Shown here piece after piece: positions 4,054 to 55,073 of a DNA stretch of 64,000 nucleotides; the first letter of the stretch is position 1, and every line of letters starts with the position of its first letter. The stretch covers positions 124,001-188,000 of IMG/VR virus record IMGVR_UViG_3300047095_000752; one strand, written 5' to 3'. The translations under genes were made by a program, and so were the position numbers. The notes under the pieces were generated by a model. That model was not told the origin of the DNA. It did no database searches and was given only the letters and a program-made list of their open reading frames with translations.

Positions 4054-4809
4054 ATGTCAAAAGCACACAGTCACGATTTTGTATTTAAGACATACGCAGC
4101 CGAGAACTACACGCTGGTTACTATGTATACCAATAGCCATAGTAAAGATGAATTACGTTGCCCCAAAGGGCATAAAGTAGATATGCTTTTTACAAATTTT
4201 TACAATAAAGGGTGTAGATGTCTAAAGTGTTCAGGATCTGAGAAATTTGATCATGAATTTGTATTTAATGAATATGCCAAAGAAGGGTATATTATGAAAA
4301 ATATTTATAAAAATTGTGATACACCTGATGAGTTACTTTGCCCTAGAAAACATGATGTACAAGCGCGTTTCTCGTATTTTCGGAGGGGTGACCGTTGTAG
4401 ATTTTGTAAATATGAAAATATACAGGGAGAAAATCATCCAAAATTTAATCCAGATCGAACTAGAGTGCGTAGATGTGCATATTTATCATTTAATTTAAAT
4501 AAAATTCAAATTTTACGGGATGATCCGAACTACGATCTGTATTTATCGTCGTATAATGAGGCGGAATTCCAAAGAAAACTTACTGGGAATAAATATATTA
4601 AATCCATCATGTCTGTAGATCATATATTACCACGAGTCGCTTTTATTGACAATAATTTAGATGAAATTTATGATAAAAAGGTAATTAAAAAAATCTGCAA
4701 CCTCCGTGAAAACTTACGAATAATACCAAAAGAAGAAAATGGCACTAAATCCGGCAAGTACAACCAAGATGAATTTATGAAATGGTTTATGTCTAAGATT
4801 AATACTTAA
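4054..4809 (+). CDS. Zinc-finger-repeat HNH homing endonuclease (2 repeats)
   Basis: Two CPxxH...RCxxC repeats; C-terminal DHILPR...ICNLRENLRI...N..K HNH motif. Confidence 0.8.
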   Translation: MSKAHSHDFVFKTYAAENYTLVTMYTNSHSKDELRCPKGHKVDMLFTNFYNKGCRCLKCSGSEKFDHEFVFNEYAKEGYIMKNIYKNCDTPDELLCPRKHDVQARFSYFRRGDRCRFCKYENIQGENHPKFNPDRTRVRRCAYLSFNLNKIQILRDDPNYDLYLSSYNEAEFQRKLTGNKYIKSIMSVDHILPRVAFIDNNLDEIYDKKVIKKICNLRENLRIIPKEENGTKSGKYNQDEFMKWFMSKINT

Positions 4810-5047
4810 ATTCAAACTCCAATTGTTCTTCTGTATTATATTTCATCGTATCTACACAATAATGGCAATATAAATATTTACCGATAGGCTTCCACCCAGC
4901 CCCCTCTAAAGTCTCAGTAGGATCTATTCGCTTTCCGTGTAGTTCTCCCCGGCACCCTCGGCATACAGCCCGCCATATGATTCCCCATTTCATATCAATA
5001 TCTCTATAAGTATTTAAGCATCTAACGCCTTGAATTTCGATTTGCAT
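4799..5047 (-). CDS. Small CxxC...CxxC zinc-finger protein
   Basis: CRGC and CHYC pairs. Confidence 0.55.
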   Translation of the reverse strand: MQIEIQGVRCLNTYRDIDMKWGIIWRAVCRGCRGELHGKRIDPTETLEGAGWKPIGKYLYCHYCVDTMKYNTEEQLEFEFKY

Positions 5048-5048
5048 A

Positions 5049-5267
5049 TTATATATCGATTCTTAATATTTCTATATTTTCACGATCTTTTAATGGAGGT
5101 AGTGGTATATACTGTTTTTTATTCCAACAAATACACCATTGACCTTGATGTCTATAATATACTCCGTATTCGTATTCTTTTGTATTTCGACATGCGTACA
5201 CACCGTCCTCAACTTCTTCATTAATCTTTTGCCATTTCATTCGAGTGTTCCTTTTCGTTTTGGACAA
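5049..5267 (-). CDS. Hypothetical protein (start uncertain)
   Basis: ORF abutting 4799..5047. Confidence 0.5.
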   Translation of the reverse strand: MSKTKRNTRMKWQKINEEVEDGVYACRNTKEYEYGVYYRHQGQWCICWNKKQYIPLPPLKDRENIEILRIDI

Positions 5268-5303
5268 AATATGGTATAATTATAGTTGAAAGAGGAATTT
5301 GAT

Positions 5304-6059
5304 ATGCCAGCAAAACTTAAACATGAATTCGTATTTAATGAATATGCTAAACGGGGATATACGTTACTCGACCTATATAAAAATAGTGATCATAAATCTA
5401 AAGTTATGTGCCCAAAAGGGTGTGTTACAGAAATGAGATATAATAATTTTAAATACGGTGCGGACTGCTTGTTATGTTCCGGGGTTGCCCCGTATACCCA
5501 CGAATTTATATTTAATGAATATGCCAAAGAGGGTTATGTATTAGATAGTATATATAAAAGAAATAAGCATAAAGATGACCTGATCTGCCCACGTGGACAT
5601 AAAATAAAAATGAAATATAATAATTTTCAACAAGGGGATCGGTGTAGAGATTGTAAGTATGAAGACATGAGTGGTGAAAATCATTATCGGTTTAATCATG
5701 ACCGTACACGCAAGCGCCGGACGGATTATCTTCGTTTTGATTTAAGAAGAATTAAAATTTTAAAAGATGATCCGAACTATGATACATACAAATCCGCAAA
5801 GATTAAATCCAAACTTGAAAGTAAACTTAATAATAACCCCCATGTGAAATGTAGTATGACTGTAGATCATATATTTCCACGTACAGCATTTATAGATAAT
5901 GATTTGGACTTAATTCACGATTCCAAAATTATACAAAAAATATGTAACTTACGTGAAAACTTAAGGATCTTACCAAGAGAAGAGAATGGATCCAAGGGTG
6001 GAAAATACGATCAAGAAGAGTTCATGAAATGGTTTAGTGAAATAATAAAAAAATATTGA
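5304..6059 (+). CDS. Zinc-finger-repeat HNH homing endonuclease (2 repeats)
   Basis: Paralog of 4054..4809; GAGGA RBS before ATG 5304; extended -10 TGGTATAAT upstream. Confidence 0.8.
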   Translation: MPAKLKHEFVFNEYAKRGYTLLDLYKNSDHKSKVMCPKGCVTEMRYNNFKYGADCLLCSGVAPYTHEFIFNEYAKEGYVLDSIYKRNKHKDDLICPRGHKIKMKYNNFQQGDRCRDCKYEDMSGENHYRFNHDRTRKRRTDYLRFDLRRIKILKDDPNYDTYKSAKIKSKLESKLNNNPHVKCSMTVDHIFPRTAFIDNDLDLIHDSKIIQKICNLRENLRILPREENGSKGGKYDQEEFMKWFSEIIKKY

Positions 6060-6071
6060 AACCATTATGAT

Positions 6072-6094
6072 TTCAATATTTAATATATATAATA
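6072..6094 (-). repeat. 23-bp direct repeat of 4018-4040 (1 mismatch) / promoter motif copy
   Basis: TTCAATATTTAATATATATAATA vs TTCAATAATTAATATATATAATA. Confidence 0.7.
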
Positions 6095-6106
6095 TATACA
6101 AAAAAA

Positions 6107-7578: not shown

Positions 7579-7587
7579 TTTATATCC

Positions 7588-7962: not shown

Positions 7963-7977
7963 AATACAATTTCCTTA

Positions 7978-8247: not shown

Positions 8248-8251
8248 TTAA

Positions 8252-8668: not shown

Positions 8669-8688
8669 ATTATCAATACCTTTATTTA

Positions 8689-13533: not shown

Positions 13534-14073
13534 CTAGACCTGTGGTACGCCGGGTTCCAGCGGTGCTCCGTTCCCATCTTCCGGCGCACCTTCCGACGGT
13601 TCGTTGTACTGACTTTCGTCAATCGCTTGGTTAAGTTCACCTGTGGTGTACCGCATCTTGAGTCCATCGATGATGTAGCGCAACGACTTAGGCGTCGGTT
13701 TCACCACCGGATCCACGGCGGGGGGTGCGGTATAATATAATCCATTGATCTCCCACTGCTGCTTGCTCGGATTCCAGACTTCCTCTTCCCTCCGACCATA
13801 GAACCAGCGGGTCGGTATACCCCACTTGCCACCACTGGATGATCGGTATGCGCCATCCCAGTACCAGACGATGAGAGGACCATTTTTATATTCTGCCCAA
13901 ATCGGCCACTTTTTCTCGGCTAGACTATCGGGTCTGTCTGGAGTGTTCGTTCGCCAGTCGTAACCACCCACATTGAGGTAAGGAGCGACTGTTCCATATT
14001 GGTCCTGAGCGCCGCCGACGCTATATCTTAATCGTGTTATCATTTTATTCCTTCTACACCGATGGAACACCAT
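13534..14073 (-). CDS. Trp/Gly-rich hypothetical protein, high GC (start may be MITR)
   Basis: ORF with visibly elevated GC. Confidence 0.6.
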   Translation of the reverse strand: MVFHRCRRNKMITRLRYSVGGAQDQYGTVAPYLNVGGYDWRTNTPDRPDSLAEKKWPIWAEYKNGPLIVWYWDGAYRSSSGGKWGIPTRWFYGRREEEVWNPSKQQWEINGLYYTAPPAVDPVVKPTPKSLRYIIDGLKMRYTTGELNQAIDESQYNEPSEGAPEDGNGAPLEPGVPQV

Positions 14074-14099
14074 CTTATATTAAATATATACTATTATAA

Positions 14100-14438
14100 T
14101 TAATATTTGCCGCGCCGGGTCGATGGAGATGATAACGTATCACCTTTCGGTCCAGCCCACAAATCTTTACAAGCCCAATATGCGGCAGAAAATCTATCTT
14201 TCTGCTGATCACATTTATGTCTTGCTCTAAATGACTTTCTTGCTACGTCACTGTAGTTGTGACCATATCCCGTAGCGCCATAATGAATTAACTTCTCACG
14301 ACCACCTTCACAGACCTTGACCATTTTCTTCTTACCGGGTCTGGTTGAATTCATTGGTTTATTACAGGGCATTTTACTTTTATCGCTATTTTCTTTTAAT
14401 ATTGATTCTAAAAATAATTTACAGTCGCGTATTAACAT
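14100..14438 (-). CDS. Small basic protein with KSFRARHxC...AAYW motif (widespread in large viruses)
   Basis: PGKKKMV...IHYG..GY...RKSFRARHKC...SAAYWAC. Confidence 0.6.
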   Translation of the reverse strand: MLIRDCKLFLESILKENSDKSKMPCNKPMNSTRPGKKKMVKVCEGGREKLIHYGATGYGHNYSDVARKSFRARHKCDQQKDRFSAAYWACKDLWAGPKGDTLSSPSTRRGKY

Positions 14439-14449
14439 TTTTATATTCC

Positions 14450-15325
14450 TTACACCGAAGGTATTCCATCAGCGATTCGGTATGTGATTGATACCGGATA
14501 AGTTATTGTAAGTCTAGATCCAACCCTGAGTTGTGTCGCCATATTTGATAGTAATGATGAATTTTCAGAATTTGCTATAATATCAGATGTCTTCCAACTA
14601 ATTCTTTGATGCTTAGCTTGACTATTATAAACTAAAGTATAGTCGTAATTGTATTTTTGTTGAATTGAGAAATTATTAAGTTTAATTGATATACCAGACG
14701 GATTTGAAGGTTCTCTTAGTAAGTCTACGTATTTATTGGCTAGATCGGTAGATGTTAATATTTTAATTTCAGTCTTCTCGGTATTGTATATCCCGAGTAT
14801 CTGGGGTTGACCGAATCCTAACAATTGTTTCTCAGCGTCCAGTCTTTCCATTTCCATTTTATCTAATGGGTATTTTTTATAATATTGATTTATTTTAGTA
14901 TCTGATAATACAGTTTCTTTTAGTGGGATTATATTTTTATCAACTTGTCTATCACTAAATAATTGAAATATTGATGTATACGGCGGCACTAAAATAGTTT
15001 CAAAATCAACAAAATCTTCTCTCGAACTAACATTGTTGACATATAAGATTAAAGGCCAATATATGGTAGTATTATAATAATCAAAACTAACATAGTCTGG
15101 TCTCATATACCAACGTGAACGAAACGCAACTTCTTCACTTGAGTTTAGTAAGATGAAGAAGTTGCGATCAAAAGTTAATATATCAAAAGCTGGGAATTTA
15201 ACTTCAATATTGTTTTCAGTATCAACATCTATATATCTATTTCTAAAATTATCAATATCTGTTGCTAATTTTGAATTTCTAGATGCTTCTGTTCTAATTG
15301 AAGATTCTATTGGTTTAAGGGACAT
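14450..15325 (-). CDS. Baseplate wedge protein, gp53/LysM-like
   Basis: RPDYVSFDYYNTTIYWPLILYVNN motif. Confidence 0.65.
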   Translation of the reverse strand: MSLKPIESSIRTEASRNSKLATDIDNFRNRYIDVDTENNIEVKFPAFDILTFDRNFFILLNSSEEVAFRSRWYMRPDYVSFDYYNTTIYWPLILYVNNVSSREDFVDFETILVPPYTSIFQLFSDRQVDKNIIPLKETVLSDTKINQYYKKYPLDKMEMERLDAEKQLLGFGQPQILGIYNTEKTEIKILTSTDLANKYVDLLREPSNPSGISIKLNNFSIQQKYNYDYTLVYNSQAKHQRISWKTSDIIANSENSSLLSNMATQLRVGSRLTITYPVSITYRIADGIPSV

Positions 15326-28291: not shown

Positions 28292-28678
28292 CTACGATTT
28301 GGCTTTGTAGTACTTTATACCAAGTTTGTCTAGCTCCGATTTTAACAATTGAATTCGCTCTTCGGAACTACTACAACAATCATTCTTTGTAATTGTATTT
28401 GAAACTCGGGTTGAATTCCAACCATATACTTTTCGCATTATACTAAGTGTGGTCATCTTTTGCTTTGAATTTTTATTTTCACACAGATTATATGTTATAC
28501 CATCGTCACCCTTTGGTTCCGAGTTTCTCAATATTGACTTTGATATTCCAGCTTTATTTATTAAAAACCCAACTAGACATTGACAGTCATCTTTATCGCA
28601 GAAGCTGCCTTTTATAAGCTTATCAGGTAACTGAACACGGGACGGCTTCTTGAGTGTGGGGGCTTTGACTGTTTTCAT
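28292..28678 (-). CDS. Hypothetical protein
   Basis: AAGGA RBS; CQCLVG motif. Confidence 0.55.
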   Translation of the reverse strand: MKTVKAPTLKKPSRVQLPDKLIKGSFCDKDDCQCLVGFLINKAGISKSILRNSEPKGDDGITYNLCENKNSKQKMTTLSIMRKVYGWNSTRVSNTITKNDCCSSSEERIQLLKSELDKLGIKYYKAKS

Positions 28679-29624
28679 TTTCGTATTCCTTTAGTCTAAG
28701 GTTAAACCAAGTGAGAAATTCATCTTGGTTGTATTTGGCTCTCTTGTCTGAGTTCTCGGTTCTTGTGATTATTCTTAAGTTTTCTCTTAAGTTGCAAATG
28801 GATTTGATTATGGCTTTATCATATTTTATGTCAAAATCGTTATCAACGAAAGCCGCTCGCGGAAATATATGATCCACTTCGTAAATATTTCTGAGATCGT
28901 GACGATGCTTTCTATTGTGTTTTGCTAGATATTTATTATTTAAAAAATCATTGTAGTTTGGATCATCTGATAGAATGTGAATTTGACTGTGGTGAAATGA
29001 TAAAAATTTTCGGCGAATATCTCTGGTCCGATCTATATTCCATCTCGTGTGGTTTTCACCTGATATACTTTTATAAAAACATTCTCTACATTTATAACCA
29101 TATTGAAAATCCCCAAATGTACGTTCAGATTTATGACCAGCCGGGCATTTCATTTCAAGTTTTGTATTAGCGTTTTTATATTCAGTGCTTAATAGAATAT
29201 AACCTGTAGATTCGATTGTTGATTTAACGTGTTCATATGAATGTTTTACTAAACCTGCGCATATCTTACATCTATTATTGTTATCTTTAAAACTATTAAA
29301 TATAACATCGTATGTATGATCTTTTGGGCATTTAACTGTTAATTTACTACAATTATTTTCATACACTCCCGATATATATTTATAACCTTTTGACTCTATA
29401 TAATTTATAACATCGTTTATATCTAATTTTCGTTTATTTAAACTGCATTGTTTACATCTACGTCCCGCTTTAAAATTGTTGTATATGGAGTAAAATATAT
29501 GATCATCGGGACATTTAATCTTTAGTTTATCACTATTTTTGGTATATGTTTTACTTAGTAGTTTATACCCGCTTTCTTTTTCAATTTCATTTTTAACATA
29601 TTCGTATTCTAATTTCTTAGGCAT
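28623..29624 (-). CDS. Zinc-finger-repeat HNH homing endonuclease (3 repeats)
   Basis: Three CPxxH..RCxxC repeats; DHIFPR...ICNLRENLRI. Confidence 0.8.
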   Translation of the reverse strand: MPKKLEYEYVKNEIEKESGYKLLSKTYTKNSDKLKIKCPDDHIFYSIYNNFKAGRRCKQCSLNKRKLDINDVINYIESKGYKYISGVYENNCSKLTVKCPKDHTYDVIFNSFKDNNNRCKICAGLVKHSYEHVKSTIESTGYILLSTEYKNANTKLEMKCPAGHKSERTFGDFQYGYKCRECFYKSISGENHTRWNIDRTRDIRRKFLSFHHSQIHILSDDPNYNDFLNNKYLAKHNRKHRHDLRNIYEVDHIFPRAAFVDNDFDIKYDKAIIKSICNLRENLRIITRTENSDKRAKYNQDEFLTWFNLRLKEYENENSQSPHTQEAVPCSVT

Positions 29625-31967
29625 TTATATCACTCCGTTGTCACTCAGATAATCTCCGATCAAGATGAACATACTGTCAGTATCGCCGTATGCAACATAT
29701 GGTAGATCGGAATTCTCAAAGTGTTCGATGTAGGATGTTTTAATAGTTGAATCATCCGTCTGTAAATAATTTGAAAGATGATATACGGAAAATTTAAGGG
29801 CTTCTTGACCTGTGCTGGTGATCGCTTTCGCCATATCTAGATTGTACATACGGAAAAATGGCAACCCCAGGATCCCATAAATGCTATTGCTGACAATTTT
29901 ATAACTGCTCTGTTTATTATCAAATTGCTTTAATTCTACCTTCATCCGCTCCTTAGTCACAGGATCCAGATCCGTATTTGTATTAATTTCTTGTCTAAGA
30001 TCGCCTAATTTCTTTTTATAAAGATCGCGCTGATCGCCCAAGTGAGTTAACACTTCGTGGAAGAATGATAGCTCAACTTCATGTTGAACAAAAAGGCATC
30101 CATTAATCGTTATAATATAATCATTCTTTACTATGAATTCTTCAAACTCAGCCGGAGTTAAATATATATCTTCGCTGGATCTAAGGATCGGATTAAGTGT
30201 AACCTTAATTTGATCCGGTAGTTGTGATTTTTTATATAGATATGAATATGCGTCTTTTTCTGACACTTTACCTTTGTATGTATTAGGTCCTATATTCATA
30301 GATTGAATTATTGATGGATACAGTGATTTAAAGTCAAAATCGACAACCCACTGGTGAACACCTACCTTTGGTTCCAGTACATATGCCCCTGAGAATGTCG
30401 CGTGATTTTGTTTTATTGAATTTCTGCATACTAAATTCTTATCCTTAGCGAACTTCAATAGAATTGGATCAACAAGACCAGATGTGGTCTCAGCCCGTCT
30501 CCAAGTACTACTACAAGTCTTTATAAGTTCAAATCGCAAATCTATATGGTGGAGAGCGTCTTCAAGTTCAGATAGCAGTACAGTATCAACCCCAGAATAT
30601 AATATAAACTTAACAAGATCACTTTCGTACATAGTATTAATGGTACCTTCAAAAGCGACTTTACCTTCACCCAGTACCTTCTGTGATATATTATTTAATT
30701 TATAACTTTCTTCTACATTTTGCGTAAGTTTTTTATATATTGCTAATTGGTCTACCATATATAGACCATATACTGTCGTCCCATAATATTCACTTATGTC
30801 AACATCAGCAAGTCCGATTGGAGACAATGAATCTACATCCAATCCCAATTTATGCATGCGATTTACTGTATAGGGCACATCGAATAGCTCTGAATTCCAC
30901 CCCGCCCAAACATCAGGATCGAGTTCTTTTGCTTTTTCTATAAATGCCGTTATAAGATCAGCTTCTGAGTCAAAAATCTTTATAATATATTCATTAATCT
31001 CTGGGAACACGCTTAAATTATCATATAAGCTCTTATGCCCTTTATTGTATGATGTTGTGTCCATTTCAGGTAGTTGTAGAATATAGACGTGTGTAGCCCC
31101 ATCACTGTCCAGTTTAAAAGATATCGAGTTAATCGGGAACTCAGCTTCAAGAGCGAATGGAAATGCTTTATGTTGTCCGGTATACACTTCAATATCCCAG
31201 TATAGTATCTTTAATTTATACTGGCATTCCGGTTCAGTTCTATTGTAATAATAGTCAATAGAATGTTTAATATCCGGTTTAACATCTTCTTCGTACATCG
31301 CTGTAGTTGGGAGAAGTCCAACTTTGGTTGTATGTAACTGTACGTCGGATACCTTCTTTATTATATCACTGTCTCTAATGTCCATAGGTACTGAATAGAA
31401 ATAAGTATCTTTTGAATTTACTGTGTGGTATTTTTTAGTTCCATTTGCATCTCTAAACACATATAGAATCTTACTTTTAAACTTATTGTATTGTATGTCA
31501 ATTAATATGTGATTTGAATCGTAACACCAATCGGGTAGTTTAAACGAGTGACATTTTGCTTCTTCATTTGTAACGACTGTGTTTATACTCTTTTCTCTAT
31601 TTTTAAAGTATAATTTAGATATGGTAGTAAATTGCTCTTCTACGAACGAATAGAAAAAGTCCAATTCACTACATACCTCGTCTAGATCATAAGTGATCAT
31701 CAACTTTATATCTTTATATTTAATACCTTTACCTACAACAGACTCAAACTTATCACCCAACTCGTCGTTAAACGTTTTCGTCACACCCTCCCCCATAATT
31801 ACAGTGAGTGTAGCATCTGTAGCTTTGATGTGATCTTCGGTTAGCTTACTTGTTGGATATATTTTATGATCTATCTTATCGAAGTTGTTAGTCTTCAAGA
31901 TCTTTTTGAATAACTTATTTTTTATAGTTTCTTGATTTGCATAAATTGCAATTGGAATTGAAGCCAC
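29625..31967 (-). CDS. Family B DNA polymerase, N-terminal subunit (UDG-like domain, 3'-5' exonuclease, palm motifs A-C)
   Basis: WDIEV (ExoI), GWNSELFD (ExoII), YSGVD (ExoIII), DFKSLYPS (A), KIVSNSIYG (B), YGDTDS (C); stop 15 aa after DTDS. Confidence 0.92.
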   Translation of the reverse strand: MASIPIAIYANQETIKNKLFKKILKTNNFDKIDHKIYPTSKLTEDHIKATDATLTVIMGEGVTKTFNDELGDKFESVVGKGIKYKDIKLMITYDLDEVCSELDFFYSFVEEQFTTISKLYFKNREKSINTVVTNEEAKCHSFKLPDWCYDSNHILIDIQYNKFKSKILYVFRDANGTKKYHTVNSKDTYFYSVPMDIRDSDIIKKVSDVQLHTTKVGLLPTTAMYEEDVKPDIKHSIDYYYNRTEPECQYKLKILYWDIEVYTGQHKAFPFALEAEFPINSISFKLDSDGATHVYILQLPEMDTTSYNKGHKSLYDNLSVFPEINEYIIKIFDSEADLITAFIEKAKELDPDVWAGWNSELFDVPYTVNRMHKLGLDVDSLSPIGLADVDISEYYGTTVYGLYMVDQLAIYKKLTQNVEESYKLNNISQKVLGEGKVAFEGTINTMYESDLVKFILYSGVDTVLLSELEDALHHIDLRFELIKTCSSTWRRAETTSGLVDPILLKFAKDKNLVCRNSIKQNHATFSGAYVLEPKVGVHQWVVDFDFKSLYPSIIQSMNIGPNTYKGKVSEKDAYSYLYKKSQLPDQIKVTLNPILRSSEDIYLTPAEFEEFIVKNDYIITINGCLFVQHEVELSFFHEVLTHLGDQRDLYKKKLGDLRQEINTNTDLDPVTKERMKVELKQFDNKQSSYKIVSNSIYGILGLPFFRMYNLDMAKAITSTGQEALKFSVYHLSNYLQTDDSTIKTSYIEHFENSDLPYVAYGDTDSMFILIGDYLSDNGVI

Positions 31968-31984: not shown

Positions 31985-33113
31985 TTATCTTTTAAATGCA
32001 GTTCTACGAATCAATCGAGTTGTATTTTTTCTGCTTACAAAATCATTTTCTGGAATCATATGATATAAATCTAAAAGAGACATACTCGCAAATTTACTAA
32101 ATAAAACTTTAAACATAGAATTTAAAATATAATCAAATCCATCGAGTCTTTCATAGGGTCTCTTTATGAATTTTGTTTTTTTATTATCATTTTTACAAAT
32201 AATAAATACGAATGAGAAAAAGTCAACTAATACACTATGTATAGCATCATGAATTAATAATGTAGTATAATATTCTATGTTTAGGTGATATCTAAATTTA
32301 GGCATAATTAAATACATGGGGTTGTAATAGTTTTCTTTTTTGTTCACTTTATAACCCTTACATTTTCATGATAGCGGTTGAATAGTTCTGAGTTACTACA
32401 GTAGTTGTGGTTATAATTTATTGTGAAGGATCTTCGGAAATTAGATCTGATCCCTAAGTCTAAAATTTTAACCGTGAACTTGAATTTCAGTCTGTTGAAA
32501 TCCAGATGTACGGTATAATAATCATTTCCTAATATTATAGCTATAAGTTTGGATAATTTTTTAACTTCTATTTGTTCCAACATATATGATATATAATATA
32601 TATTACTCCCGATATATCGAATTGATATTGGTGGTATAACTATTACACCGTGTGCCATAAATGCTCGTACTGATAATGGGTATATGACATTTGCTTAAAT
32701 TCAGTTCTTCTAAATTTATTTGAAGTTTTATCTTGTACAAGTATAGAACCATAAAACCAACATATCGCACGTAGATTGGCTGCGATTGGATAATGTATAT
32801 ATAAGGATAACTGAGTCAGGCATCCATAATATATATGCTTATCACTTTCGTTTCGGATACCATTTATTTTAAGTGTATTTTCGTTTTTCTTTCTGCGATA
32901 TCTTGGGATTATTATATTTGCATTCTTTCTTAGTGTAACCGACAACAATCCTTGAATGACACACATGGTCCTACCAAGTCCTTGTTGAAGTGTTTTTATT
33001 TTACCTTTATTCCCATATGAGATATCTTGATGTTGGTCGTGGATTTTATAATGATCTATATTTGGAAAGAATAAAAATAAAAATGGACTTTTACTTCTCT
33101 TTCTTATACTCAT
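31985..33113 (-). CDS. Three small hypothetical ORFs (31985-32347, 32344-32658, 32643-33113)
   Basis: Coupled ORFs between the two polymerase genes. Confidence 0.45.
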
Positions 33114-33445
33114 AGCAGTTTTATAAAGTTGGGGTTATTTTTTATTAGGGCGAGTAACGAATGTGATAATACTTCGATCATTTGCTCATAGAAGGAGTCG
33201 TCATCCTCGTCTAGGTTTAGACCGGCTTGAATCAGTATAGCGTGAAGGATCTCGTGTAAAATTGTAACTTCCATTTTACCTTTAGCTAAGGAACGTTTTA
33301 TAACGAGTTTTAAATTCTCATTATCTGTGTACGCAGAATAGTCGCCATCCGGGGTCATTTTTGGCTCATCTTCAAATACAATCTGATAGGTTAATGGTGA
33401 TATATATATTTCTTTTAGATCTGTTATTTTTTTGGCATCGGACAC
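33110..33445 (-). CDS. HExxH zinc metallopeptidase-like protein (ImmA/IrrE-like)
   Basis: TILHEILHAI ... EQMIE. Confidence 0.65.
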   Translation of the reverse strand: MSDAKKITDLKEIYISPLTYQIVFEDEPKMTPDGDYSAYTDNENLKLVIKRSLAKGKMEVTILHEILHAILIQAGLNLDEDDDSFYEQMIEVLSHSLLALIKNNPNFIKLL

Positions 33446-34404
33446 TGTGTTGACCTCTCGGTTGTATCGGTTGTATTATATTCATTTATCTTTTCATTAA
33501 ACCAAGCCATAAATTCTTCTTGGTTGTATTTACCACCTTTAGTGTTGTTATCTTTTTCGTGTATTATTCTTAAGTTTTCTCGTAGGTTGCAGATCTCTTT
33601 TATTATAGCCGGATCGTATATATTATCTAAGTTGTTATCAATAAATGCTATTCTCGGTTGAATGTGATCTACCGTATAATCAGATCTGTCCCATATATTA
33701 CTTGATGTCTTGGCGAGTTTTTGAGATTGGACGTGATTGTTGTAATTCGGATCATCATTTAATATATGTATTTTTTTATAATCAAACGATAAATATTTAG
33801 TTCTAGTTTGTCGGGTCCGGTCAGTCATCCAACGAACGTTATTTTCACCAGACTTATTTTCATAGGAACATTCCCTACACCTAACATCATTATTTTTAAA
33901 ATTATCAAAGATCATTTCTATTTTATGATTTTTAGGGCACAGTAGTTCGTCTTTATTTTTACAGCCTTTATATTCGGAAATTAACGTATAGCCATGATCT
34001 TTATAATAATTAAATACAAAATCATGACTATATTGCATTTTTATCTTATGACATTCTATACATCTACGTCGAGTCCTAAAATGGCTAAAACTCATTTCTA
34101 TTTTATGACCTTTCGGACATATCAATTCATCTTTTGTCATACACCCTTTATATTTAGAATTTAATGTATACCCACGTTTTTTATAATAATTTTCTACATA
34201 ACTTTCATCAGTTCTTTTATTTATATTTGAACATTCTCTACACTTGTGTCCGTTTTTAAAACTATTGAATAGCATTTCTATTTTATGATTTTTAGGACAT
34301 AATAATGTATTTTTTGTACGGGTATTAACATATTGTGTAAGTAATGTGTATCCACGTTCTGCATAATAATTAAATACGAATTCATGTGTTAATTTGTTTG
34401 GCAT
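33424..34404 (-). CDS. Zinc-finger-repeat HNH homing endonuclease (3 repeats)
   Basis: Three CPKxH repeats; DHIQPR...ICNLRENLRI. Confidence 0.8.
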   Translation of the reverse strand: MPNKLTHEFVFNYYAERGYTLLTQYVNTRTKNTLLCPKNHKIEMLFNSFKNGHKCRECSNINKRTDESYVENYYKKRGYTLNSKYKGCMTKDELICPKGHKIEMSFSHFRTRRRCIECHKIKMQYSHDFVFNYYKDHGYTLISEYKGCKNKDELLCPKNHKIEMIFDNFKNNDVRCRECSYENKSGENNVRWMTDRTRQTRTKYLSFDYKKIHILNDDPNYNNHVQSQKLAKTSSNIWDRSDYTVDHIQPRIAFIDNNLDNIYDPAIIKEICNLRENLRIIHEKDNNTKGGKYNQEEFMAWFNEKINEYNTTDTTERSTQCPMPKK

Positions 34405-34429
34405 AACTTTTCCTACATTATAGTTTAGT

Positions 34430-35206
34430 TTATTGAAATACTTGATCCATAGAATTTATGTTGTTTTGAATAAGAGCAAGAAGTACTTCCTTTACTCTGT
34501 CCGTCCATACGAATCGCAATTGTTCTGCCACGTTACATACATAATAGTCGGGTAACGATTCCTCTTCTGCGGGTAGGACCATATATTTCTGCTTAGATCC
34601 AATTAAATGCATGTTATCCAGAATACGCTGAGGTGCTTTCATTGGGTCGATCCCATTTATCCGGAAAAGATAACCTTTTGTACCGGGCGCAAAAGTTCGA
34701 TACTCTAGCATATTCCATAAGATCATCGCTTGTACCTGATACGGTGGCTTTCCCTTATATTCAGAAAGTGGCTTCGAAAAGTTCACGGATCCAGCAATCA
34801 ACTTAGAATTTTGATTACATAATTGTATAACTTCTTTTTCCGTGTCGACAATAAATTGCTTAATTTCATTTATGTTGATCTTCTCTACTTTCAAGATCAT
34901 ATCTAAGAGAGCTTGTACCTTTTCTTTGGTGTAAACCGGAAAGTTAGAGCGACGAATCACAAGTCCTTTTAGGTCGAATTCGGATACAGTTTTACCTTCT
35001 TTATTTTTTATAAAAAGACCATATTTCTTTTTTGTAAAGAATACCGCATTACTTGCCAATACTTCTTGTTTCAATTTTAGAGCATTATATTTGGGATTGG
35101 CTCGGTGCATCCTTATGAATTCGGGTAGTAGATCTTTATTTAAAATGTCTTCTAGCTTATGACACTCTTTTAAAACAATCTGTATAAGTTCTTCTTCGGT
35201 TTTCAT
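34430..35206 (-). CDS. Family B DNA polymerase, C-terminal subunit (rest of palm + thumb)
   Basis: LKQEV...FFTKKKYGL...KGLVIRRS (KKrY and KGxxxxRS motifs). Confidence 0.88.
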   Translation of the reverse strand: MKTEEELIQIVLKECHKLEDILNKDLLPEFIRMHRANPKYNALKLKQEVLASNAVFFTKKKYGLFIKNKEGKTVSEFDLKGLVIRRSNFPVYTKEKVQALLDMILKVEKININEIKQFIVDTEKEVIQLCNQNSKLIAGSVNFSKPLSEYKGKPPYQVQAMILWNMLEYRTFAPGTKGYLFRINGIDPMKAPQRILDNMHLIGSKQKYMVLPAEEESLPDYYVCNVAEQLRFVWTDRVKEVLLALIQNNINSMDQVFQ

Positions 35207-48784: not shown

Positions 48785-48793
48785 AAGGTTTAT

Positions 48794-49798
48794 ATGAGTA
48801 ATACAAGATATAACATACAAACAGCAACCGAAGTGTTTAAACAATATGGTTTAGAATTACTCGAAACTGAATATAAAAATTTAGACGTACGAATGAAGTA
48901 TAAATGCTTAACATGTCATTATGTGGGGGATAAGCCTTTATATGATGTTTTAAGATTTAAATCTGGATGTAAAAGTTGTAATTTAAATAAATTATACGAA
49001 TCAAAGAAATATACCATAGATTTTGCGAGAGACAGTTTTTTAAAAAATGGGTTGATTCTATTAGATGATGTATATATAAATAATCAGACTCCTATGAAAT
49101 TTGAATGTGCAACGTGTTGTAATTCAGGTCAAAATAATTTAGCAAATATATTAAATCAAGGTCAAGGGTGTAAAAAATGTAAAGATGAGGCGTCAGCCTC
49201 CAAAAAACGATTCAATATAGAATATGCTAAAACTGTATATTTAGAAAAAAATTTAGAACTCCTTGAAAATGTTTATATAAATAGTAACACAAAAATGAAA
49301 TATCGGTGTTTGATTTGTAATTATATAGGACAAAATAGTTTAGGTAGTATGGATGATAAAAGCCGTGGGTGTAGAGAATGTCATTATAGAAATATGTGCG
49401 GTAAAAATCATTGGGCGTGGAATCCCAAAAAAACTGAATTGAATGAAATGATTAGAGTAAAAAGATCTAAACATTGGGTTATAAAACATATGACTGATGA
49501 TCCGTTGTATAATGAATGGTTATTAGGGTATGACACTTATGAAATTCACCACACTCCTCAAATTAATGACTGGAGTTCGTATTTAATTGAAAATAACCTA
49601 ACTGATAATAATGAAATTATAATGTATGTAAGAGAGACTGCAAATACTAGAGAAAGACTTAGTATAGTTCCGACTAAAATTCATAAATCCATGCATAAAA
49701 ATAGAAGTTATAAGTTCAATAAAGAAAAATTCGAAAAATTTTTAGAAGAAAATGATATAGGAGTATTAGATTATGCCAATCGAAGTCCCATACAATGA
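48794..49798 (+). CDS. Zinc-finger-repeat HNH-like endonuclease (3 CxxC-type repeats)
   Basis: GLELLE..Y...MKYKC..C...GC..C repeats; KHMxDDP; EIHH...N...L...H. Confidence 0.7.
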   Translation: MSNTRYNIQTATEVFKQYGLELLETEYKNLDVRMKYKCLTCHYVGDKPLYDVLRFKSGCKSCNLNKLYESKKYTIDFARDSFLKNGLILLDDVYINNQTPMKFECATCCNSGQNNLANILNQGQGCKKCKDEASASKKRFNIEYAKTVYLEKNLELLENVYINSNTKMKYRCLICNYIGQNSLGSMDDKSRGCRECHYRNMCGKNHWAWNPKKTELNEMIRVKRSKHWVIKHMTDDPLYNEWLLGYDTYEIHHTPQINDWSSYLIENNLTDNNEIIMYVRETANTRERLSIVPTKIHKSMHKNRSYKFNKEKFEKFLEENDIGVLDYANRSPIQ

Positions 49799-51365: not shown

Positions 51366-51376
51366 AGGAGACGGTA

Positions 51377-51940: not shown

Positions 51941-51952
51941 GGAGATGGTATA

Positions 51953-52339: not shown

Positions 52340-52343
52340 GTCT

Positions 52344-53267
52344 ATGCCTAAAATAATAACACATAACGAAGTGTTTGAATATTACAAAAAAGAAGGTTAT
52401 GTTTTAGAATCTATATATAGAGGCTGTAAGTATAAAGACGAACTTATTTGCCCAGAAGGTCATAAGATTGAAATGACTTTTAATAACTTTAAAAGTTATG
52501 GTAAAAAGACGGGTAAAAGATGTGGTGAATGTTTCGGAACTGAAAAATATTCGCAAGAATATGTATTCAATTATTATAAAAAATATGGATATACACTAAG
52601 ATCTATCTATAAAAACAATCACACTAAAGACGAGTTAACATGCCCGGATAATCACAAAGTTGACATGTTATTTGATAATTTCAAAAATAAAGGCAGTCGT
52701 TGTGTAAAATGTTCCGGTGTTGAAAAATTTACTCAAGAATATGTATTTAATTATTATAAGAATGAAGGATATACATTAACAAGCATTTATAATGGGTGCG
52801 AGTCTAAAGATGAATTGATATGCCCCGAAGGTCACAAGATAGATATGCTTTTCAATAACTTCAAAAATAAAGATAGTAGATGTAAAGAATGTTATATAGA
52901 AAATAATAGGGGTGAAAACCATCCAAACTTTAACCCAAATAGAGAAGAACTTTTATTAAATCATAGATTAAGAACAAGTAAAAAGAATCCATGGATTAAA
53001 AAACATATGAAAGATGACCCAAATTATAACAATTGGATATTAGACTCAAAGCAATTTGTAGTAGATCATATAATACCGGTAAAGTTATTTTGTAAATTAT
53101 ATAATGAATATAATTTAGATGAATATAAACTTAGAAAAGCAATTAATAAAATAGACAATCTACAATTATTAACAATAGAACAAAATTCAAATAAACACGC
53201 CAAAGGTTGTATAAATGAAGCCAAGGAATATTTAATTAAAAACAATATACAATTAATCAACACATAA
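52344..53267 (+). CDS. Zinc-finger-repeat HNH homing endonuclease (3 repeats)
   Basis: Three CPxxH repeats; DHIIP...NKIDNLQLL...NSNK. Confidence 0.8.
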   Translation: MPKIITHNEVFEYYKKEGYVLESIYRGCKYKDELICPEGHKIEMTFNNFKSYGKKTGKRCGECFGTEKYSQEYVFNYYKKYGYTLRSIYKNNHTKDELTCPDNHKVDMLFDNFKNKGSRCVKCSGVEKFTQEYVFNYYKNEGYTLTSIYNGCESKDELICPEGHKIDMLFNNFKNKDSRCKECYIENNRGENHPNFNPNREELLLNHRLRTSKKNPWIKKHMKDDPNYNNWILDSKQFVVDHIIPVKLFCKLYNEYNLDEYKLRKAINKIDNLQLLTIEQNSNKHAKGCINEAKEYLIKNNIQLINT

Positions 53268-53278
53268 GGAGAAATACC

Positions 53279-53749
53279 ATGGATGAATTAGAACAAATCC
53301 CCGTAGATGAAGTAGTCCAACAAGGAGTAGATGGTGGTGCAAGCTTTGACGGTATATTTGATGGTATAATGGGATTAGCTGGCAGTAGCGGTATGGTCGG
53401 CGTTGTAATTGTAGCCGTACTCGGACTTATAGCTTTCCTAAAATTTGGTAAAAAGACTAAACAATTAAATAAGATTCAAAAAGAAGATGTTAAAGTATAT
53501 AAAGAAAATAAAAAAGAGTCTTTAAAAGAAATTAAACAAATAGATAAAAAAGCAGAAGATATTATAAACAAAATTGTAAAGAATAGCGAAGAAGAAGATG
53601 ACATTGAAATGGAAATTGCAACGGGTATAATTGACGTTGTAGATGAAATTGAAGAGATAAAGAAAGATCCAACCCGCCGGACCATACCTTCCGCTAATGA
53701 ACGACTGAGAATCGCCCTACAAAAGGCGAAAGAACGTAGAGGACACTAA
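53279..53749 (+). CDS. TM + coiled-coil protein, i-spanin-like
   Basis: Single TM followed by a charged coiled coil; upstream of a lipoprotein gene. Confidence 0.5.
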   Translation: MDELEQIPVDEVVQQGVDGGASFDGIFDGIMGLAGSSGMVGVVIVAVLGLIAFLKFGKKTKQLNKIQKEDVKVYKENKKESLKEIKQIDKKAEDIINKIVKNSEEEDDIEMEIATGIIDVVDEIEEIKKDPTRRTIPSANERLRIALQKAKERRGH

Positions 53750-53751
53750 TT

Positions 53752-54306
53752 ATGTACAAGCACACAATACTTTTAATTACAATTATGGTTGCACTTATGG
53801 GTTGTGCTTCCGATGGACAGGATGCTTTAGAAACGTACAAGTCACCTGAGATTACCTTTGAACCCACTTTAGAATATTCTCTAGACACTTCAAAGCTAGA
53901 CGATCTACATGAAGAGACTTTGAGTGGTTTACTCGATGCTCCTATTTATGCGAATATCACCGATGATGGTACTATGAGTTTAACTTTTGATGATACTGAG
54001 GCGAACGCCGTCTTACTTTACAGTGAAGATTATAGTAAGATCGCTGATCTTGCAGAAATCACCGAAGGTTATAGAAATATTGTTATGAGTCAAGTCGAAC
54101 TAATTAAGGTTAAGGATTCTACGATTCAAGCTTTACAACAATTAGTATTACTCCAGCAAAGTTCGAAAGAGATCTACAAGGAAAATTTCGTATTGGCGGA
54201 CAAGCTGTATAGGGCTGAACATAAGCTTAGGATGCGAGAAAAGGTATACGGAGAGATCAGGTTTTTTAGCACAATACTTGGCATTATAGCTGTTGGTGTT
54301 ATTTAA
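53752..54306 (+). CDS. Lipoprotein with C-terminal TM, spanin-like
   Basis: Signal peptide with lipobox LMGC; C-terminal FFSTILGIIAVGVI. Confidence 0.6.
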   Translation: MYKHTILLITIMVALMGCASDGQDALETYKSPEITFEPTLEYSLDTSKLDDLHEETLSGLLDAPIYANITDDGTMSLTFDDTEANAVLLYSEDYSKIADLAEITEGYRNIVMSQVELIKVKDSTIQALQQLVLLQQSSKEIYKENFVLADKLYRAEHKLRMREKVYGEIRFFSTILGIIAVGVI

Positions 54307-55073
54307 TGTCTCATAATAAATTACCATATGAAGAAGTTTATAAGGTCTTTAAAGATCAAGGCTGCGAATTATTAGGAAGAGAATACATTAATAAAAAAAC
54401 TTTAATGAAATATAGATGTAAGTGTGGTATTGAAGGTAAGATACGATTAAATAATTTTAAAGATGGTCAACGATGTCAAACGTGCCGATGTGATAGAAAA
54501 TCTAAATATGAAGACGCCTATAAGTGTTTCAAAGATCAAGGTTGCGAATTATTAGAAAATGAATATACATATATATCATCTAAATCTAAACTTAAATACA
54601 AATGTGAATGTGGTTTTCCCAGTATAATACGATTAGATGCTTTTAAGGGCGGGTCTCGATGTAAAGAATGTCAAAGATCAAATAGGATAGGTGAAAAAAA
54701 TTCAAATTATAAAACAGATAGGACACGAAAGCGGCGCGGAGATTTATTAAAATTTGACTACAAACATGAAATTATATTAAGTGATGATCCAATGTATAAC
54801 TTATATATAGCATCTAAACAAATATTCACACAAACAAAAAAATCTAAATATGGAGCTAAGCCTAAATATTCTATCGATCATATACAACCAAGAATTGCCT
54901 TTATCGATAATGATCTAGATAATATTCATGGTACAAAAATAATTAAGAAGATCTGTAACCTTCGTGAAAATCTTAGAATAATCCCAAAAGAAGAAAATGG
55001 ATCTAAAGGCGGCAAATACATCCAAGAAGAATTCATGGCTTGGTTCAATGATAAAATAAAGGAGTATGAATAA
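54306..55073 (+). CDS. Zinc-finger-repeat HNH homing endonuclease (2 CxCG-type repeats)
   Basis: FKDQGCELL..EY...KY.C.CG repeats; DHIQPR...ICNLRENLRI. Confidence 0.8.
   Translation: MSHNKLPYEEVYKVFKDQGCELLGREYINKKTLMKYRCKCGIEGKIRLNNFKDGQRCQTCRCDRKSKYEDAYKCFKDQGCELLENEYTYISSKSKLKYKCECGFPSIIRLDAFKGGSRCKECQRSNRIGEKNSNYKTDRTRKRRGDLLKFDYKHEIILSDDPMYNLYIASKQIFTQTKKSKYGAKPKYSIDHIQPRIAFIDNDLDNIHGTKIIKKICNLRENLRIIPKEENGSKGGKYIQEEFMAWFNDKIKEYE

What the first reader, a model, noticed from the sequence alone, without database searches (positions are those of the whole stretch)
4054..55073. Seven natural zinc-finger nucleases with 2-3 tandem ~60-aa repeats and mix-and-match HNH domains
Seen: genes at 4054, 5304, 28623, 33424, 48794, 52344 and 54306 combine tandem repeats (e.g. 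HEFVFNxYxKxGYxLxSxYKxxxxKDELICPxGHKIxMxFxxFxxGxRCxxC) with an HNH domain. The repeat scaffold is conserved while the Y-xxxxx-K and F-xx-F positions vary (TNSHS/KNCDT/KRNKH/KGCMT; TN/SY/NN/SH/DN). Modules are swapped between genes: 54306 has CxCG-type repeats on the ICNLRENLRI nuclease; 52344 has CPxGH repeats on a different nuclease; 48794 shares the W..KHMxDDP linker with 52344 but has CxxC repeats. Inference: an expanding homing-endonuclease family that retargets by repeat variation, possibly with a readable repeat-to-DNA code useful for engineering.
Basis: partly seen in the sequence, partly recalled or inferred. Interest (0 to 1): 0.75.

Follow-up and report, generated by a model that had tools for sequence, protein, structure and literature searches.

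The report
Zinc-finger-array HNH homing endonuclease family
A 245-kb lake-water jumbo phage carries 14 copies (7 in this window) of a selfish "homing" nuclease gene built from 2-4 zinc-finger repeats plus an HNH cutting domain; it is a real, well-preserved gene family, but it belongs to a kind of phage element already described.

Summary
All seven ORFs exist. Together they hold 18 repeats of about 52 residues on a 60-residue period, each followed by a linker and a nuclease domain. The whole genome has 14 such genes and 38 repeats.

The repeats belong to the CapR/DUF4379 treble-clef zinc-finger superfamily. Its founding member, CapR, is an experimentally shown DNA binder. The nuclease is a His-Me (HNH_4/Cas9-like) domain with an invariant D-H...N...N motif.

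Six of the seven genes sit at exact intergenic points that are empty in syntenic relatives from other metagenomes. One ortholog pair has dN/dS of 0.12. These are therefore live, free-standing homing endonuclease genes.

"Mix-and-match" is supported. Repeat types and nuclease classes are reassorted. At one site, sister nucleases carry entirely different repeat arrays.

A "readable repeat-to-DNA code" has no support.

Tandem CapR-type zinc-finger arrays with domain shuffling are already described for T5orf172 homing endonucleases (Barth 2023). An HNH enzyme with two zinc fingers is also known (I-TevIII, 2007). This is a new member of a known kind, of moderate interest.

The parts
4054..4809 (+). 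HEG A: two type-I repeats (array 4075-4407), then linker and class N1 HNH (4408-4809). It lies antisense to the flanking minus-strand genes.
   Evidence: The site is empty in relative L006, where the 80-aa gene is followed directly by the spacer and the 478-aa gene.
5304..6059 (+). HEG B: two type-I repeats (array 5325-5654), then linker and class N1 HNH (5655-6059). It lies antisense, between the amidase gene and a 72-aa gene.
   Evidence: The site is empty in L006. Its nuclease is sister to that of A (91/87; 95/91).
28623..29624 (-). HEG C: three type-III repeats (array 29079-29603), then linker and class N1 HNH (28623-29078). Its ATG directly follows the stop codon of the DNA polymerase N-terminal piece (TAAATG).
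   Evidence: (CapR PF21817, 43.4 bits). The site is also occupied in L001, by a gene whose nuclease is sister (95/90) but whose array is three type-I repeats.
33424..34404 (-). HEG D: three type-I repeats (array 33868-34383), then linker and class N1 HNH (33424-33867). The inserted segment is about 33446-34429.
   Evidence: AF2 model pLDDT is 92.9. The site is empty in L001, where an 18-nt spacer takes its place. It is occupied by an 80%-identical ortholog in L011, with dN/dS 0.12.
48794..49798 (+). HEG E: three type-IV (CxxC) repeats (array 48821-49381), then linker and a class N3 canonical H-N-H domain (49382-49798). The inserted segment is 48785-49772.
   Evidence: The site is empty in L002, L004, L005 and contig V0iq0pCh. 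In L002 an 11-nt spacer takes its place.
52344..53267 (+). HEG F: three type-I repeats (array 52365-52892), then linker and class N2 HNH (52893-53267).
   Evidence: (DUF4379). The site is occupied in L002 by its best match (48% identity). It is empty in L004, L005 and V0iq0pCh.
54306..55073 (+). HEG G: two type-II (CxCG) repeats (array 54330-54671), then linker and class N1 HNH (54672-55073). TAATG overlaps join it to both neighbouring genes.
   Evidence: The site is occupied in L002 (array I, I, III) and V0iq0pCh (array of three type-I repeats). It is empty in L004 and L005.
29625..31967 (-). Context: family B DNA polymerase N-terminal piece (exonuclease domain plus motifs A, B and C). It ends 15 residues after YGDTDS, where HEG C starts.
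34430..35206 (-). Context: family B DNA polymerase C-terminal (thumb, KKKY) piece, encoded upstream of the N-terminal piece. HEG D lies directly downstream of it.
   Evidence: The arrangement is conserved in L001 and L011.

Best explanation
**What it is.** These are free-standing homing endonuclease genes of one family, expanded to 14 copies in a 245-kb freshwater jumbo phage.

**Protein anatomy.** Each protein is a modular site-specific nuclease.
- The N-terminus is an array of 2-4 independently folded treble-clef zinc modules. Each is a helix, a beta-hairpin carrying a Cx3H, CxC or CxxC knuckle, a short helix, and a CxxC at the start of a further helix. They belong to the CapR/DUF4379 superfamily.
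- A conserved linker follows (G-E-N-H...D-R-T-R...D-D-P-N-Y).
- The C-terminus is a His-Me finger nuclease, either of the HNH_4/Cas9-like type (D-H...N...N) or, in one gene, a canonical H-N-H.

**Likely mechanism.**
- In a mixed infection, the zinc-finger array binds an extended DNA site in a related phage that lacks the gene.
- The tethered HNH domain nicks or cuts nearby.
- Recombinational repair from the HEG-carrying genome copies the gene, and some flanking DNA, into the empty intergenic site.
- New specificities most likely arise by exchange of whole repeats or arrays between paralogs, and between arrays and nuclease classes.

**Shown here.** Domain architecture; conserved Zn ligands and catalytic residues; purifying selection; precise insertion polymorphism; reassortment of modules.

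**Inferred.** Zinc binding, sequence-specific DNA binding, cleavage and homing.
For: **Repeats**
- There are 18 in the window and 38 in the genome, with HMM E-values of 1e-11 to 1e-25.
- Across 112 homologs there are 329 repeats, 2-6 per protein.
- Pfam CapR (PF21817) exceeds its cut-off in C, D and E, and DUF4379 does so in F.
- C29, C48 and C51 are invariant, and the fourth ligand is always present.
- The arrays are basic, with pI 8.1-9.3.
- The AF2 model has pLDDT 92.9 and shows three equal helix/hairpin/helix modules.
- 226 BFVD viral proteins match at E <= 1e-3. Several are annotated as homing endonuclease, CapR-homology or treble-clef proteins.
- CapR itself binds a specific promoter region, and this needs its four Cys (PMC8096241).

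**Nuclease**
- D246, H247, N273, N277 and N286 are invariant in 74 proteins.
- The profile matches the Cas9 HNH domain at E 0.003 and the BrxU HNH domain at E 0.009, with the DH aligned.
- 28 of 80 C-terminal domains hit Pfam HNH_4 and 7 hit GmrSD_C.
- Structural hits to many HNH domains recur but are weak, at Z about 3.

**Mobility**
- Sites A and B are empty in L006.
- Site D is empty in L001. About 984 bp replace an 18-nt spacer.
- Site E is empty in four relatives. 988 bp replace an 11-nt spacer.
- Sites F and G are empty in L004 and L005.
- No intron-like RNA was found.

**Function retained**
- dN/dS is 0.12 for the D ortholog pair: 0.09 in the repeats and 0.08 in the HNH domain. Flanking genes give 0.04-0.08.

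**Reassortment**
- The N1 nuclease clade has 100/99 support.
- Repeat clades I, II+IV and III each mix N1- and N2-linked repeats.
- The gene at genome position 225063 carries type I, II and II repeats in one array.
- At site C, the nucleases are sister (95/90) but the arrays are three type-III versus three type-I repeats.
Against: - No biochemical data exist for any member. DNA binding, cleavage, target sites and homing are all inferred.
- The HNH assignment rests on motifs and marginal statistics. No window protein reaches a Pfam HNH gathering score. Foldseek finds no PDB match at E <= 0.001.
- Site C has no empty-site relative in the data.
- Contigs from four other lake samples all carry F and G unchanged. 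No HEG-less variant of this same phage was seen, although contigs cannot show absence.
- Paralogs share at most about 81% nucleotide identity over 330 bp, so the shuffling is old. Ongoing retargeting is not demonstrated.
- At sites C and G, different arrays occupy the same locus. Array type therefore does not map simply to genomic position.
Confidence: 0.8

Rival explanations
1. The genes are domesticated phage weapons rather than selfish homing elements. They would be nucleases kept because they cut competing phages or host DNA (interference competition or host shut-off). The zinc-finger arrays would aim them at foreign DNA rather than at their own empty sites.
For: - Purifying selection on the D ortholog is as strong as on neighbouring core genes.
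- Sites C, F and G are occupied in several relatives.
- F and G are identical in four lake populations.
- There are 14 intact copies and no obvious pseudogene in the genome.
- The genes are tightly packed with their neighbours through TAATG or TAAATG junctions, which suggests co-expression.
Against: - Six of seven genes show clean presence/absence at intergenic points, which is the classic signature of mobile free-standing HEGs.
- The two roles are not exclusive, because homing itself excludes markers of the competitor.
- Nothing here identifies a host or competitor target.
Confidence: 0.12
2. Some or all copies are DNA-binding regulators like CapR. They would be repressors or activators of phage genes that keep the zinc-finger array but no longer cut DNA.
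For: - CapR is exactly such a derivative of a homing endonuclease DNA-binding domain (PMC8096241, PMC10448857).
- The arrays are more conserved than the linker between the D orthologs.
Against: - The catalytic D-H...N...N is invariant in all 74 aligned family members, and the HNH domain has dN/dS 0.08.
- All 14 genome copies keep a nuclease domain with catalytic motifs.
- No array-only protein exists in this genome.
Confidence: 0.05
3. The repeats are not DNA-reading modules. They would serve as structural zinc ribbons for dimerisation or protein-protein contacts, with specificity residing in the linker and nuclease region.
For: - In I-TevIII the dimer interface maps to the zinc-finger-containing DNA-binding domain (PMC1865063).
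- Sister nucleases at site C carry unrelated arrays.
- The conserved linker (DRTR, DDPNY) resembles the segment preceding the catalytic DH in the Cas9 HNH domain.
Against: - DNA binding by a single-module CapR protein depends on its zinc ligands.
- The arrays are basic.
- This module is fused to several unrelated nuclease types across viruses. That pattern fits a portable DNA-binding module.
Confidence: 0.03

Closest known systems
T5orf172 homing endonucleases with tandem CapR/DUF723/DUF4379 zinc-finger domains (ICP1, T5-like and Vibrio phages; Barth, Dunham & Seed 2023, PMC10448857)
   Same: - They use the same superfamily of about 50-60-residue zinc-finger DNA-binding modules, repeated 1-6 times as "beads on a string".
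- They are free-standing genes next to essential phage genes.
- Recombination occurs between repeats, and domains are swapped between HEGs.
- Their authors discuss how exchange or alteration of the DNA-binding modules could diversify target recognition.
- tblastn of HEG D finds exactly these proteins, through the repeat region only.
   Different: - Their nuclease is T5orf172 (GIY-YIG superfamily). Here it is a His-Me/HNH_4-like domain joined by its own conserved linker. Only 1 of 80 C-terminal domains gave even a weak T5orf172 hit.
- The present linker-plus-nuclease module is a small, metagenome-only family. It has 438 representatives at E <= 1e-3 among 1.84 billion, and no full-length match among 50,697 deposited phage records.
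CapR of Vibrio cholerae PLE satellites (Netter et al. 2021, PMC8096241); Pfam PF21817
   Same: - It has a homologous zinc-finger module. PF21817 is above its cut-off in C, D and E.
- It has two conserved Cys pairs about 25 residues apart.
- It is the only member of the superfamily with experimentally shown sequence-specific DNA binding.
   Different: CapR is a transcriptional repressor with no nuclease domain. The genes here carry 2-4 modules plus an intact nuclease.
I-TevIII (phage RB3 nrdB intron; Robbins et al. 2007, PMC1865063)
   Same: [quoted passage not shown] This makes it a characterised natural "zinc finger + HNH" enzyme.
   Different: - It is intron-encoded, not free-standing.
- Its finger motif is CX2CX12-13HX3C, unlike the Cx3H/CxC...CxxC module here.
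- Homology to the present repeats was not tested here.
- It acts as a dimer, which is unknown for this family.
Annotated "homing endonuclease" / "HNH endonuclease" genes with the same repeats in cultured phages and giant viruses (Bacillus phage Eldridge gp065, Campylobacter phage F336, Staphylococcus phage phiSA_BS1; PHROG 559, 681, 5104)
   Same: - They match the tandem repeat fold (BFVD E down to 5e-20).
- PHROG 559 and 681 match the arrays of all seven genes.
- Eldridge gp065 contains CapR and DUF4379 domains.
   Different: - Identity is only 27-34% and is confined to the arrays.
- Their C-terminal nucleases differ or are unassigned.
- PHROG 5104, the one PHROG that spans both array and nuclease, is labelled "unknown function".
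Engineered zinc-finger nucleases and TALENs
   Same: The design logic is the same: a tandem array of small DNA-binding modules tethered to a nuclease domain.
   Different: - The fold differs (a 52-residue treble-clef module versus a 28-residue C2H2 finger or a 34-residue TALE repeat).
- The nuclease differs (HNH versus FokI).
- No base-per-module rule is known or indicated here.

Membership tests
CapR / DUF4379 / DUF723 treble-clef zinc-finger superfamily | Match to the curated Pfam model above its gathering score | tested here: met
   - PF21817 scores 43.4 bits in C, 29.7 in D and 29.8 in E, against a cut-off of 24.2.
- PF14311 scores 24.9 bits in F, against a cut-off of 24.5.
- A, B and G reach no Pfam cut-off on their own. 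Their repeats match the family HMM at 1e-18 to 1e-24.
CapR / DUF4379 / DUF723 treble-clef zinc-finger superfamily | Two ligand pairs (a knuckle in a beta-hairpin, plus a CxxC at the start of a helix) about 15-25 residues apart | tested here: met
   - C29, C48 and C51 are invariant in 323 repeats.
- The second ligand is H33 (Cx3H), C31 (CxC) or a CxxC variant.
- AF2 places the ligands on a hairpin and a helix N-terminus.
- Zinc binding itself was not tested.
CapR / DUF4379 / DUF723 treble-clef zinc-finger superfamily | Sequence-specific DNA binding | not testable with these tools
   Known only for CapR (PMC8096241). The repeat profile has no significant sequence match among PDB chains, the best being E 0.47.
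HNH / His-Me finger endonuclease (Pfam HNH_4-like) | A beta-beta-alpha core with a catalytic His on the first strand (usually D-H) and downstream Asn or His metal ligands | tested here: met
   - D246, H247, N273, N277 and N286 are invariant.
- The model has strand 243-247, strand 278-282 and helix 283-289.
- HEG E has HH...N...H instead.
HNH / His-Me finger endonuclease (Pfam HNH_4-like) | Significant match to curated HNH models or solved HNH structures | tested here: inconclusive
   - The best window hit is HNH_4 at 16.4 bits, below the cut-off of 22.
- 28 of 80 family C-terminal domains hit HNH_4 at E <= 0.01, and 7 hit GmrSD_C.
- The profile matches the Cas9 HNH domain at E 0.003.
- Foldseek gives no match at E <= 0.001, and VIA gives Z about 3 to many HNH domains.
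Free-standing homing endonuclease gene | Presence/absence polymorphism at the same point in otherwise collinear genomes | tested here: met
   A, B, D, E, F and G each have at least one syntenic relative with an empty site. C does not.
Free-standing homing endonuclease gene | Not embedded in an intron or intein; lies between genes | tested here: met
   No Rfam family, including group I or II introns, matches in the window. The ORFs abut or slightly overlap their neighbours.
Free-standing homing endonuclease gene | Cleaves the HEG-less allele and is copied into it by repair | not testable with these tools
   The phage is uncultured, being a lake-water metagenome assembly.
T5orf172-CapR homing endonucleases (Barth 2023) | T5orf172 / GIY-YIG-type nuclease domain | tested here: not met
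   No T5orf172 hit occurs in any window protein. One of 80 family C-terminal domains gave a hit at E 0.003. The genes work like that family but are not members of it.
Programmable modular DNA readers (C2H2 zinc-finger or TALE-like code) | A few defined specificity positions on an otherwise fixed repeat | tested here: inconclusive
   - High entropy is spread over about 15-20 of 51 positions, both overall and within type I.
- Within type I the most variable positions are 49, 46, 22, 44, 26, 38, 31 and 15.
- No DNA targets are known, so residues cannot be correlated with bases.

The most novel reading that the evidence does not exclude
Each roughly 60-residue CapR-type module might read a fixed short stretch of DNA largely independently of its neighbours. 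Natural arrays of 2-6 modules would then amount to a combinatorial, re-assortable recognition system. If so, a residue-to-base rule could be learned from many array and empty-site pairs and used to build programmable HNH nickases or nucleases.

The evidence does not exclude this. Modules are independently folded, are re-used in different arrays and positions, and whole arrays are exchanged on a constant nuclease.
Probability: 0.1. Interest if true: 0.8.

Novelty: new member of a known kind. Interest (0 to 1): 0.4.

Why it matters
**Homing endonuclease evolution.** This is a clean natural example. One uncultured freshwater jumbo phage holds 14 intact paralogs, about 12.9 kb or 5% of the genome. 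They combine four repeat types with three nuclease classes. Metagenomic relatives supply matched empty and occupied sites for most copies.

**A ready experimental panel.** The arrays, swapped arrays on sister nucleases, and candidate target junctions are all available. They could be used to test whether CapR-type zinc modules are modular DNA readers. No sequence relative of the module was found among PDB chains.

**Phage genomics.** The family shows how these elements sit at, and probably helped create, a split and reordered DNA polymerase gene. It also shows how an insertion can rewire the translation start of the downstream gene.

**Limits.** The general principle has already been published for a sister class (T5orf172), so the finding extends the picture rather than changing it.

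Tried and rejected
- **Cultured relatives.** Megablast and tblastn of window core genes against 50,697 phage records found no close relative. The DNA polymerase is under 30% identical to any deposited phage.
- **IMG/VR.** Scans with two flanking proteins found nothing.
- **Searching the 137.7-kb relative as a whole.** Only two stretches of it, L001 and L002, were used.
- **Foldseek against the PDB.** Neither the full-length model nor the C-terminal domain gave a hit at E <= 0.001. AFDB/Swiss-Prot gave only weak HNH hits. NCBIfam gave nothing.
- **Repeat profile against PDB sequences.** Only insignificant CSL/DPH3-type zinc-finger hits appeared, the best at E 0.47.
- **Co-conversion near site D.** The two HEG-carrying genomes are closer to each other everywhere, so plain phylogeny explains the pattern. 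It was rejected as evidence.
- **HEG-less variants of the same phage.** Contigs from four other lake runs showed none. The two "joints" have short sides (24-40 nt) and fall in paralogous motifs, so they were rejected as cross-matches between paralogs.
- **Promoter and terminator scan around the antisense genes A and B.** It gave only generic AT-rich matches and was not used.
- **Chance, ORF artefact or pseudogene.** This was rejected on the repeat E-values, invariant ligands and dN/dS.

Full report
**Observation.**

An HMM seeded on three repeats of the 33424 gene and iterated to convergence finds 18 repeats in the seven genes. The counts are 2, 2, 3, 3, 3, 3 and 2, with independent E-values of 1e-14 to 1e-25.

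A blastp and HMM sweep of all ORFs and of the six-frame translation shows that the window holds only half the family. There are 14 genes and 38 repeats in the genome, and no protein carries repeats without the nuclease. Together the genes make up about 12.9 kb, or 5% of the genome.

**Anatomy.**

The repeat core is 51-53 residues on a 60-residue period. In 323 distinct repeats from 112 homologous proteins (2-6 repeats each), three Cys are invariant. A fourth ligand is always present, as Cx3H, CxC or CxxC. E1, V3, G11, Y12, L14, Y18, F42 and R47 are strongly conserved.

AlphaFold2 on a 74-sequence alignment gives a confident model of the 33424 protein (pLDDT 92.9). It contains three equal modules. 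Each is a helix, a short strand, a beta-hairpin bearing the first ligand pair, a short helix, and the CxxC at the start of a further helix that runs into the inter-repeat linker. This is a treble-clef-type zinc module.

Pfam places it in the CapR homology domain (PF21817). The match is above the cut-off in 28623, 33424 and 48794. DUF4379 is above its cut-off in 52344. The arrays are basic, with pI 8.1-9.3.

A repeat profile has no significant sequence match among PDB chains, the best being E 0.47. By fold, however, 226 viral proteins in BFVD match at E <= 1e-3. Many are annotated as homing endonuclease, HNH nuclease, CapR-homology or treble-clef proteins, from Bacillus, Campylobacter, Staphylococcus, Klebsiella and Escherichia phages and from giant viruses.

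**The nuclease.**

After the last repeat comes a conserved linker (G-E-N-H, D-R-T-R, D-D-P-N-Y) and then a domain of about 80 residues. D246, H247, N273, N277 and N286 are invariant across 74 proteins.

- A profile of 80 C-terminal regions hits the HNH domain of Cas9 at E 0.003 and of the GmrSD enzyme BrxU at E 0.009. The D-H aligns to the catalytic D839/H840 segment (residue numbering from my own knowledge of SpCas9).
- 28 of the 80 members individually hit Pfam HNH_4, and 7 hit GmrSD_C.
- Structure searches return many HNH domains (ZRANB3, Gme, GVE2, Cas9, BrxU, T5 SciA), but only at Z about 3.

I take the His-Me/HNH assignment as sound on motifs and weak on statistics.

Three nuclease classes exist in the genome.
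- N1 (VDHIxPRxAFIDN...ICNLRENLRI) occurs in nine genes and forms a clade with 100/99 support.
- N2 (VDHIIPVKLF...NLQLL) is seen in 52344 and the gene at genome position 50336. The genes at 39583 and 93513 are looser relatives.
- N3 is a canonical HH...N...H domain, found in 48794 only.

**Are they mobile?**

Homologs exist only in metagenome assemblies. Several lie on contigs collinear with the window, and I compared these.

- **Site D.** In L001, part of a 137.7-kb contig with core proteins 72-89% identical, the 258-aa and 111-aa genes are separated by 18 nt. In the window, about 984 bp carrying gene 33424 replace that spacer. The downstream gene now starts at a GTG inside the 3' end of the endonuclease gene.
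- **Site E.** In L002, 11 nt separate the 237-aa and 67-aa genes. In the window, 988 bp carrying gene 48794 replace them. This site is also empty in L004, L005 and a 13,967-bp JGI contig.
- **Sites F and G.** Both are occupied in L002. G is also occupied in the JGI contig. Both are empty in L004 and L005.
- **Sites A and B.** In L006 the order is amidase, 140-aa gene, 80-aa gene, 478-aa gene, with no endonuclease. The window has genes 5304 and 4054 inserted on the opposite strand at two of those junctions.
- **Site C.** The only site with no empty relative is that of gene 28623. It is occupied in L001 as well.

No Rfam family, and so no group I or II intron, is found in the window. These are therefore free-standing genes.

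Another contig, L011, carries an 80%-identical ortholog of 33424 at the same site. dN/dS is 0.12 overall: 0.09 in the repeats, 0.22 in the linker and 0.08 in the HNH domain. The three flanking genes give 0.04-0.08. The genes are maintained by selection and are not decaying.

**Mix-and-match.**

A maximum-likelihood tree of the 38 repeats gives three clades: type I (CPxGH), type III, and type II plus IV (CxCG and CxxC). Each of the three clades mixes repeats linked to N1 and to N2 nucleases. Strongly supported branches force at least three changes of partner, and the labels are no more clustered than shuffled labels.

- Types I, II and III each occur with both N1 and N2 nucleases.
- The gene at genome position 225063 has a type I, II, II array, and the gene at 85507 has a type II, III, III, III array.
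- The clearest case is site C. The window gene and the L001 gene have sister nucleases (95/90). One carries three type-III repeats and the other three type-I repeats.
- At site G the three occupants carry arrays of II-II, I-I-III and I-I-I.
- Nucleotide identity between paralogs peaks at about 81% over 330 bp, so these exchanges are old.

**The "code".**

Within type I the most variable positions are 49, 46, 22, 44, 26, 38, 31 and 15. The F-xx-F pair is mid-range. This is the ordinary pattern of a conserved core with variable surface residues.

No DNA target is known for any member. A residue-to-base rule can therefore be neither derived nor excluded.

**What is known.**

- Netter et al. (PMC8096241) showed that CapR binds a specific promoter region, and that mutating its four conserved Cys abolishes binding.
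- Barth et al. (PMC10448857) described T5orf172 homing endonucleases carrying one to six CapR/DUF723/DUF4379 modules as "beads on a string". They reported recombination between repeats and domain swapping between genes, and argued that this modularity allows rapid diversification of target recognition.
- I-TevIII is a characterised HNH homing endonuclease with two zinc fingers in its DNA-binding domain.

What is specific here is the partner. It is an HNH_4-like nuclease with its own linker, forming a small family: 438 representatives at E <= 1e-3, and 96 at E <= 1e-10, among 1.84 billion proteins. The nuclease module starts near residue 120, 180, 240 or 300, which corresponds to two to five repeats. 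No full-length counterpart exists among 50,697 deposited phage genomes. PHROG 5104, the one PHROG that spans both array and nuclease, is labelled "unknown function".

**Context.**

The phage comes from lake-water metagenomes and recurs in many lake samples. Contigs from four other runs carry genes F and G unchanged. Relatives encode split beta-prime-like RNA polymerase subunits. From my own knowledge, this is typical of phiKZ-like jumbo phages.

The family B DNA polymerase is in two pieces. The 780-residue piece has the exonuclease motifs and motifs A-C, and ends 15 residues after YGDTDS. The 258-residue thumb piece, with KKKY, is encoded 2.4 kb upstream. Endonuclease genes of this family sit directly after each piece, and 28623 starts immediately after the stop codon at the break point.

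**Verdict.**

The reading as an expanding, module-shuffling homing endonuclease family is well supported. Retargeting by repeat exchange is plausible but untested, and a readable code is unsupported. This is a new member of a known kind, of moderate interest.

Noticed in passing
window 29625-31967 (-) and 34430-35206 (-): The family B DNA polymerase is split just after motif C into a 780-aa piece and a 258-aa thumb piece. The C-terminal piece is encoded 2.4 kb upstream of the N-terminal piece, with three or four small genes and HEG D between them. The arrangement is conserved in L001 and L011. HEG C begins directly after the stop codon at the break point.
   Followed up: partly
window 33424-33445 (- strand); L001 6145-6165: The 111-aa gene downstream of HEG D starts at a GTG inside the last 22 nt of the HEG. 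The HEG-less relative uses its own ATG and spacer. Likewise, the 67-aa gene after HEG E starts 26 nt inside HEG E. The insertions supply the translation start regions of their downstream neighbours.
   Followed up: partly
L001 4586-5371; genome positions 14059-14760, 188282-188812 (just past the window end) and 216128-216640: A second, unrelated homing endonuclease family (HNH_3 + NUMOD4) occupies a site in the relative, between the 155-aa and 258-aa genes. That site is empty in the window. The window's genome has three homologs of it elsewhere.
   Followed up: partly
L005 2859-3254: A 131-aa ORF in a relative consists of the class N2 linker and nuclease only, with no zinc-finger repeats (54-57% identical to the C-terminal parts of 52344 and of the gene at genome position 50336). 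Several nuclease-only representatives also appear in the library search. They could be truncated remnants or stand-alone nucleases.
   Followed up: no
window 4054-6059: HEGs A and B lie on the plus strand inside a run of about 40 kb of minus-strand genes. They bracket two small minus-strand genes (4799-5047 and 5049-5267). The 72-aa gene lacks the C-terminal Cys-rich half of its 140-aa homolog in L006.
   Followed up: partly
L006 7902-11112, L007 3322-6405, L008 9332-13443 (regions syntenic to sequence just upstream of window position 1): Relatives encode split multisubunit RNA polymerase beta-prime-like proteins (RNA_pol_Rpb1_2 and Rpb1_5 domains). This suggests a phiKZ-like (nucleus-forming type) jumbo phage lineage from fresh water, with no close cultured relative.
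   Followed up: no
window 33110-33445 (-): The 111-aa protein next to HEG D gives a sub-threshold match to the IrrE/Peptidase_M78 N-terminal domain (E 2.7e-4) and matches PHROG 1233 (unknown function).
   Followed up: no
window 54520-55060: Contigs from other lake samples break or switch to paralog-like sequence inside the conserved nuclease motifs of HEG G. This is likely assembly-graph branching among the 14 paralogs, and a caution for metagenome assemblies of this phage.
   Followed up: no
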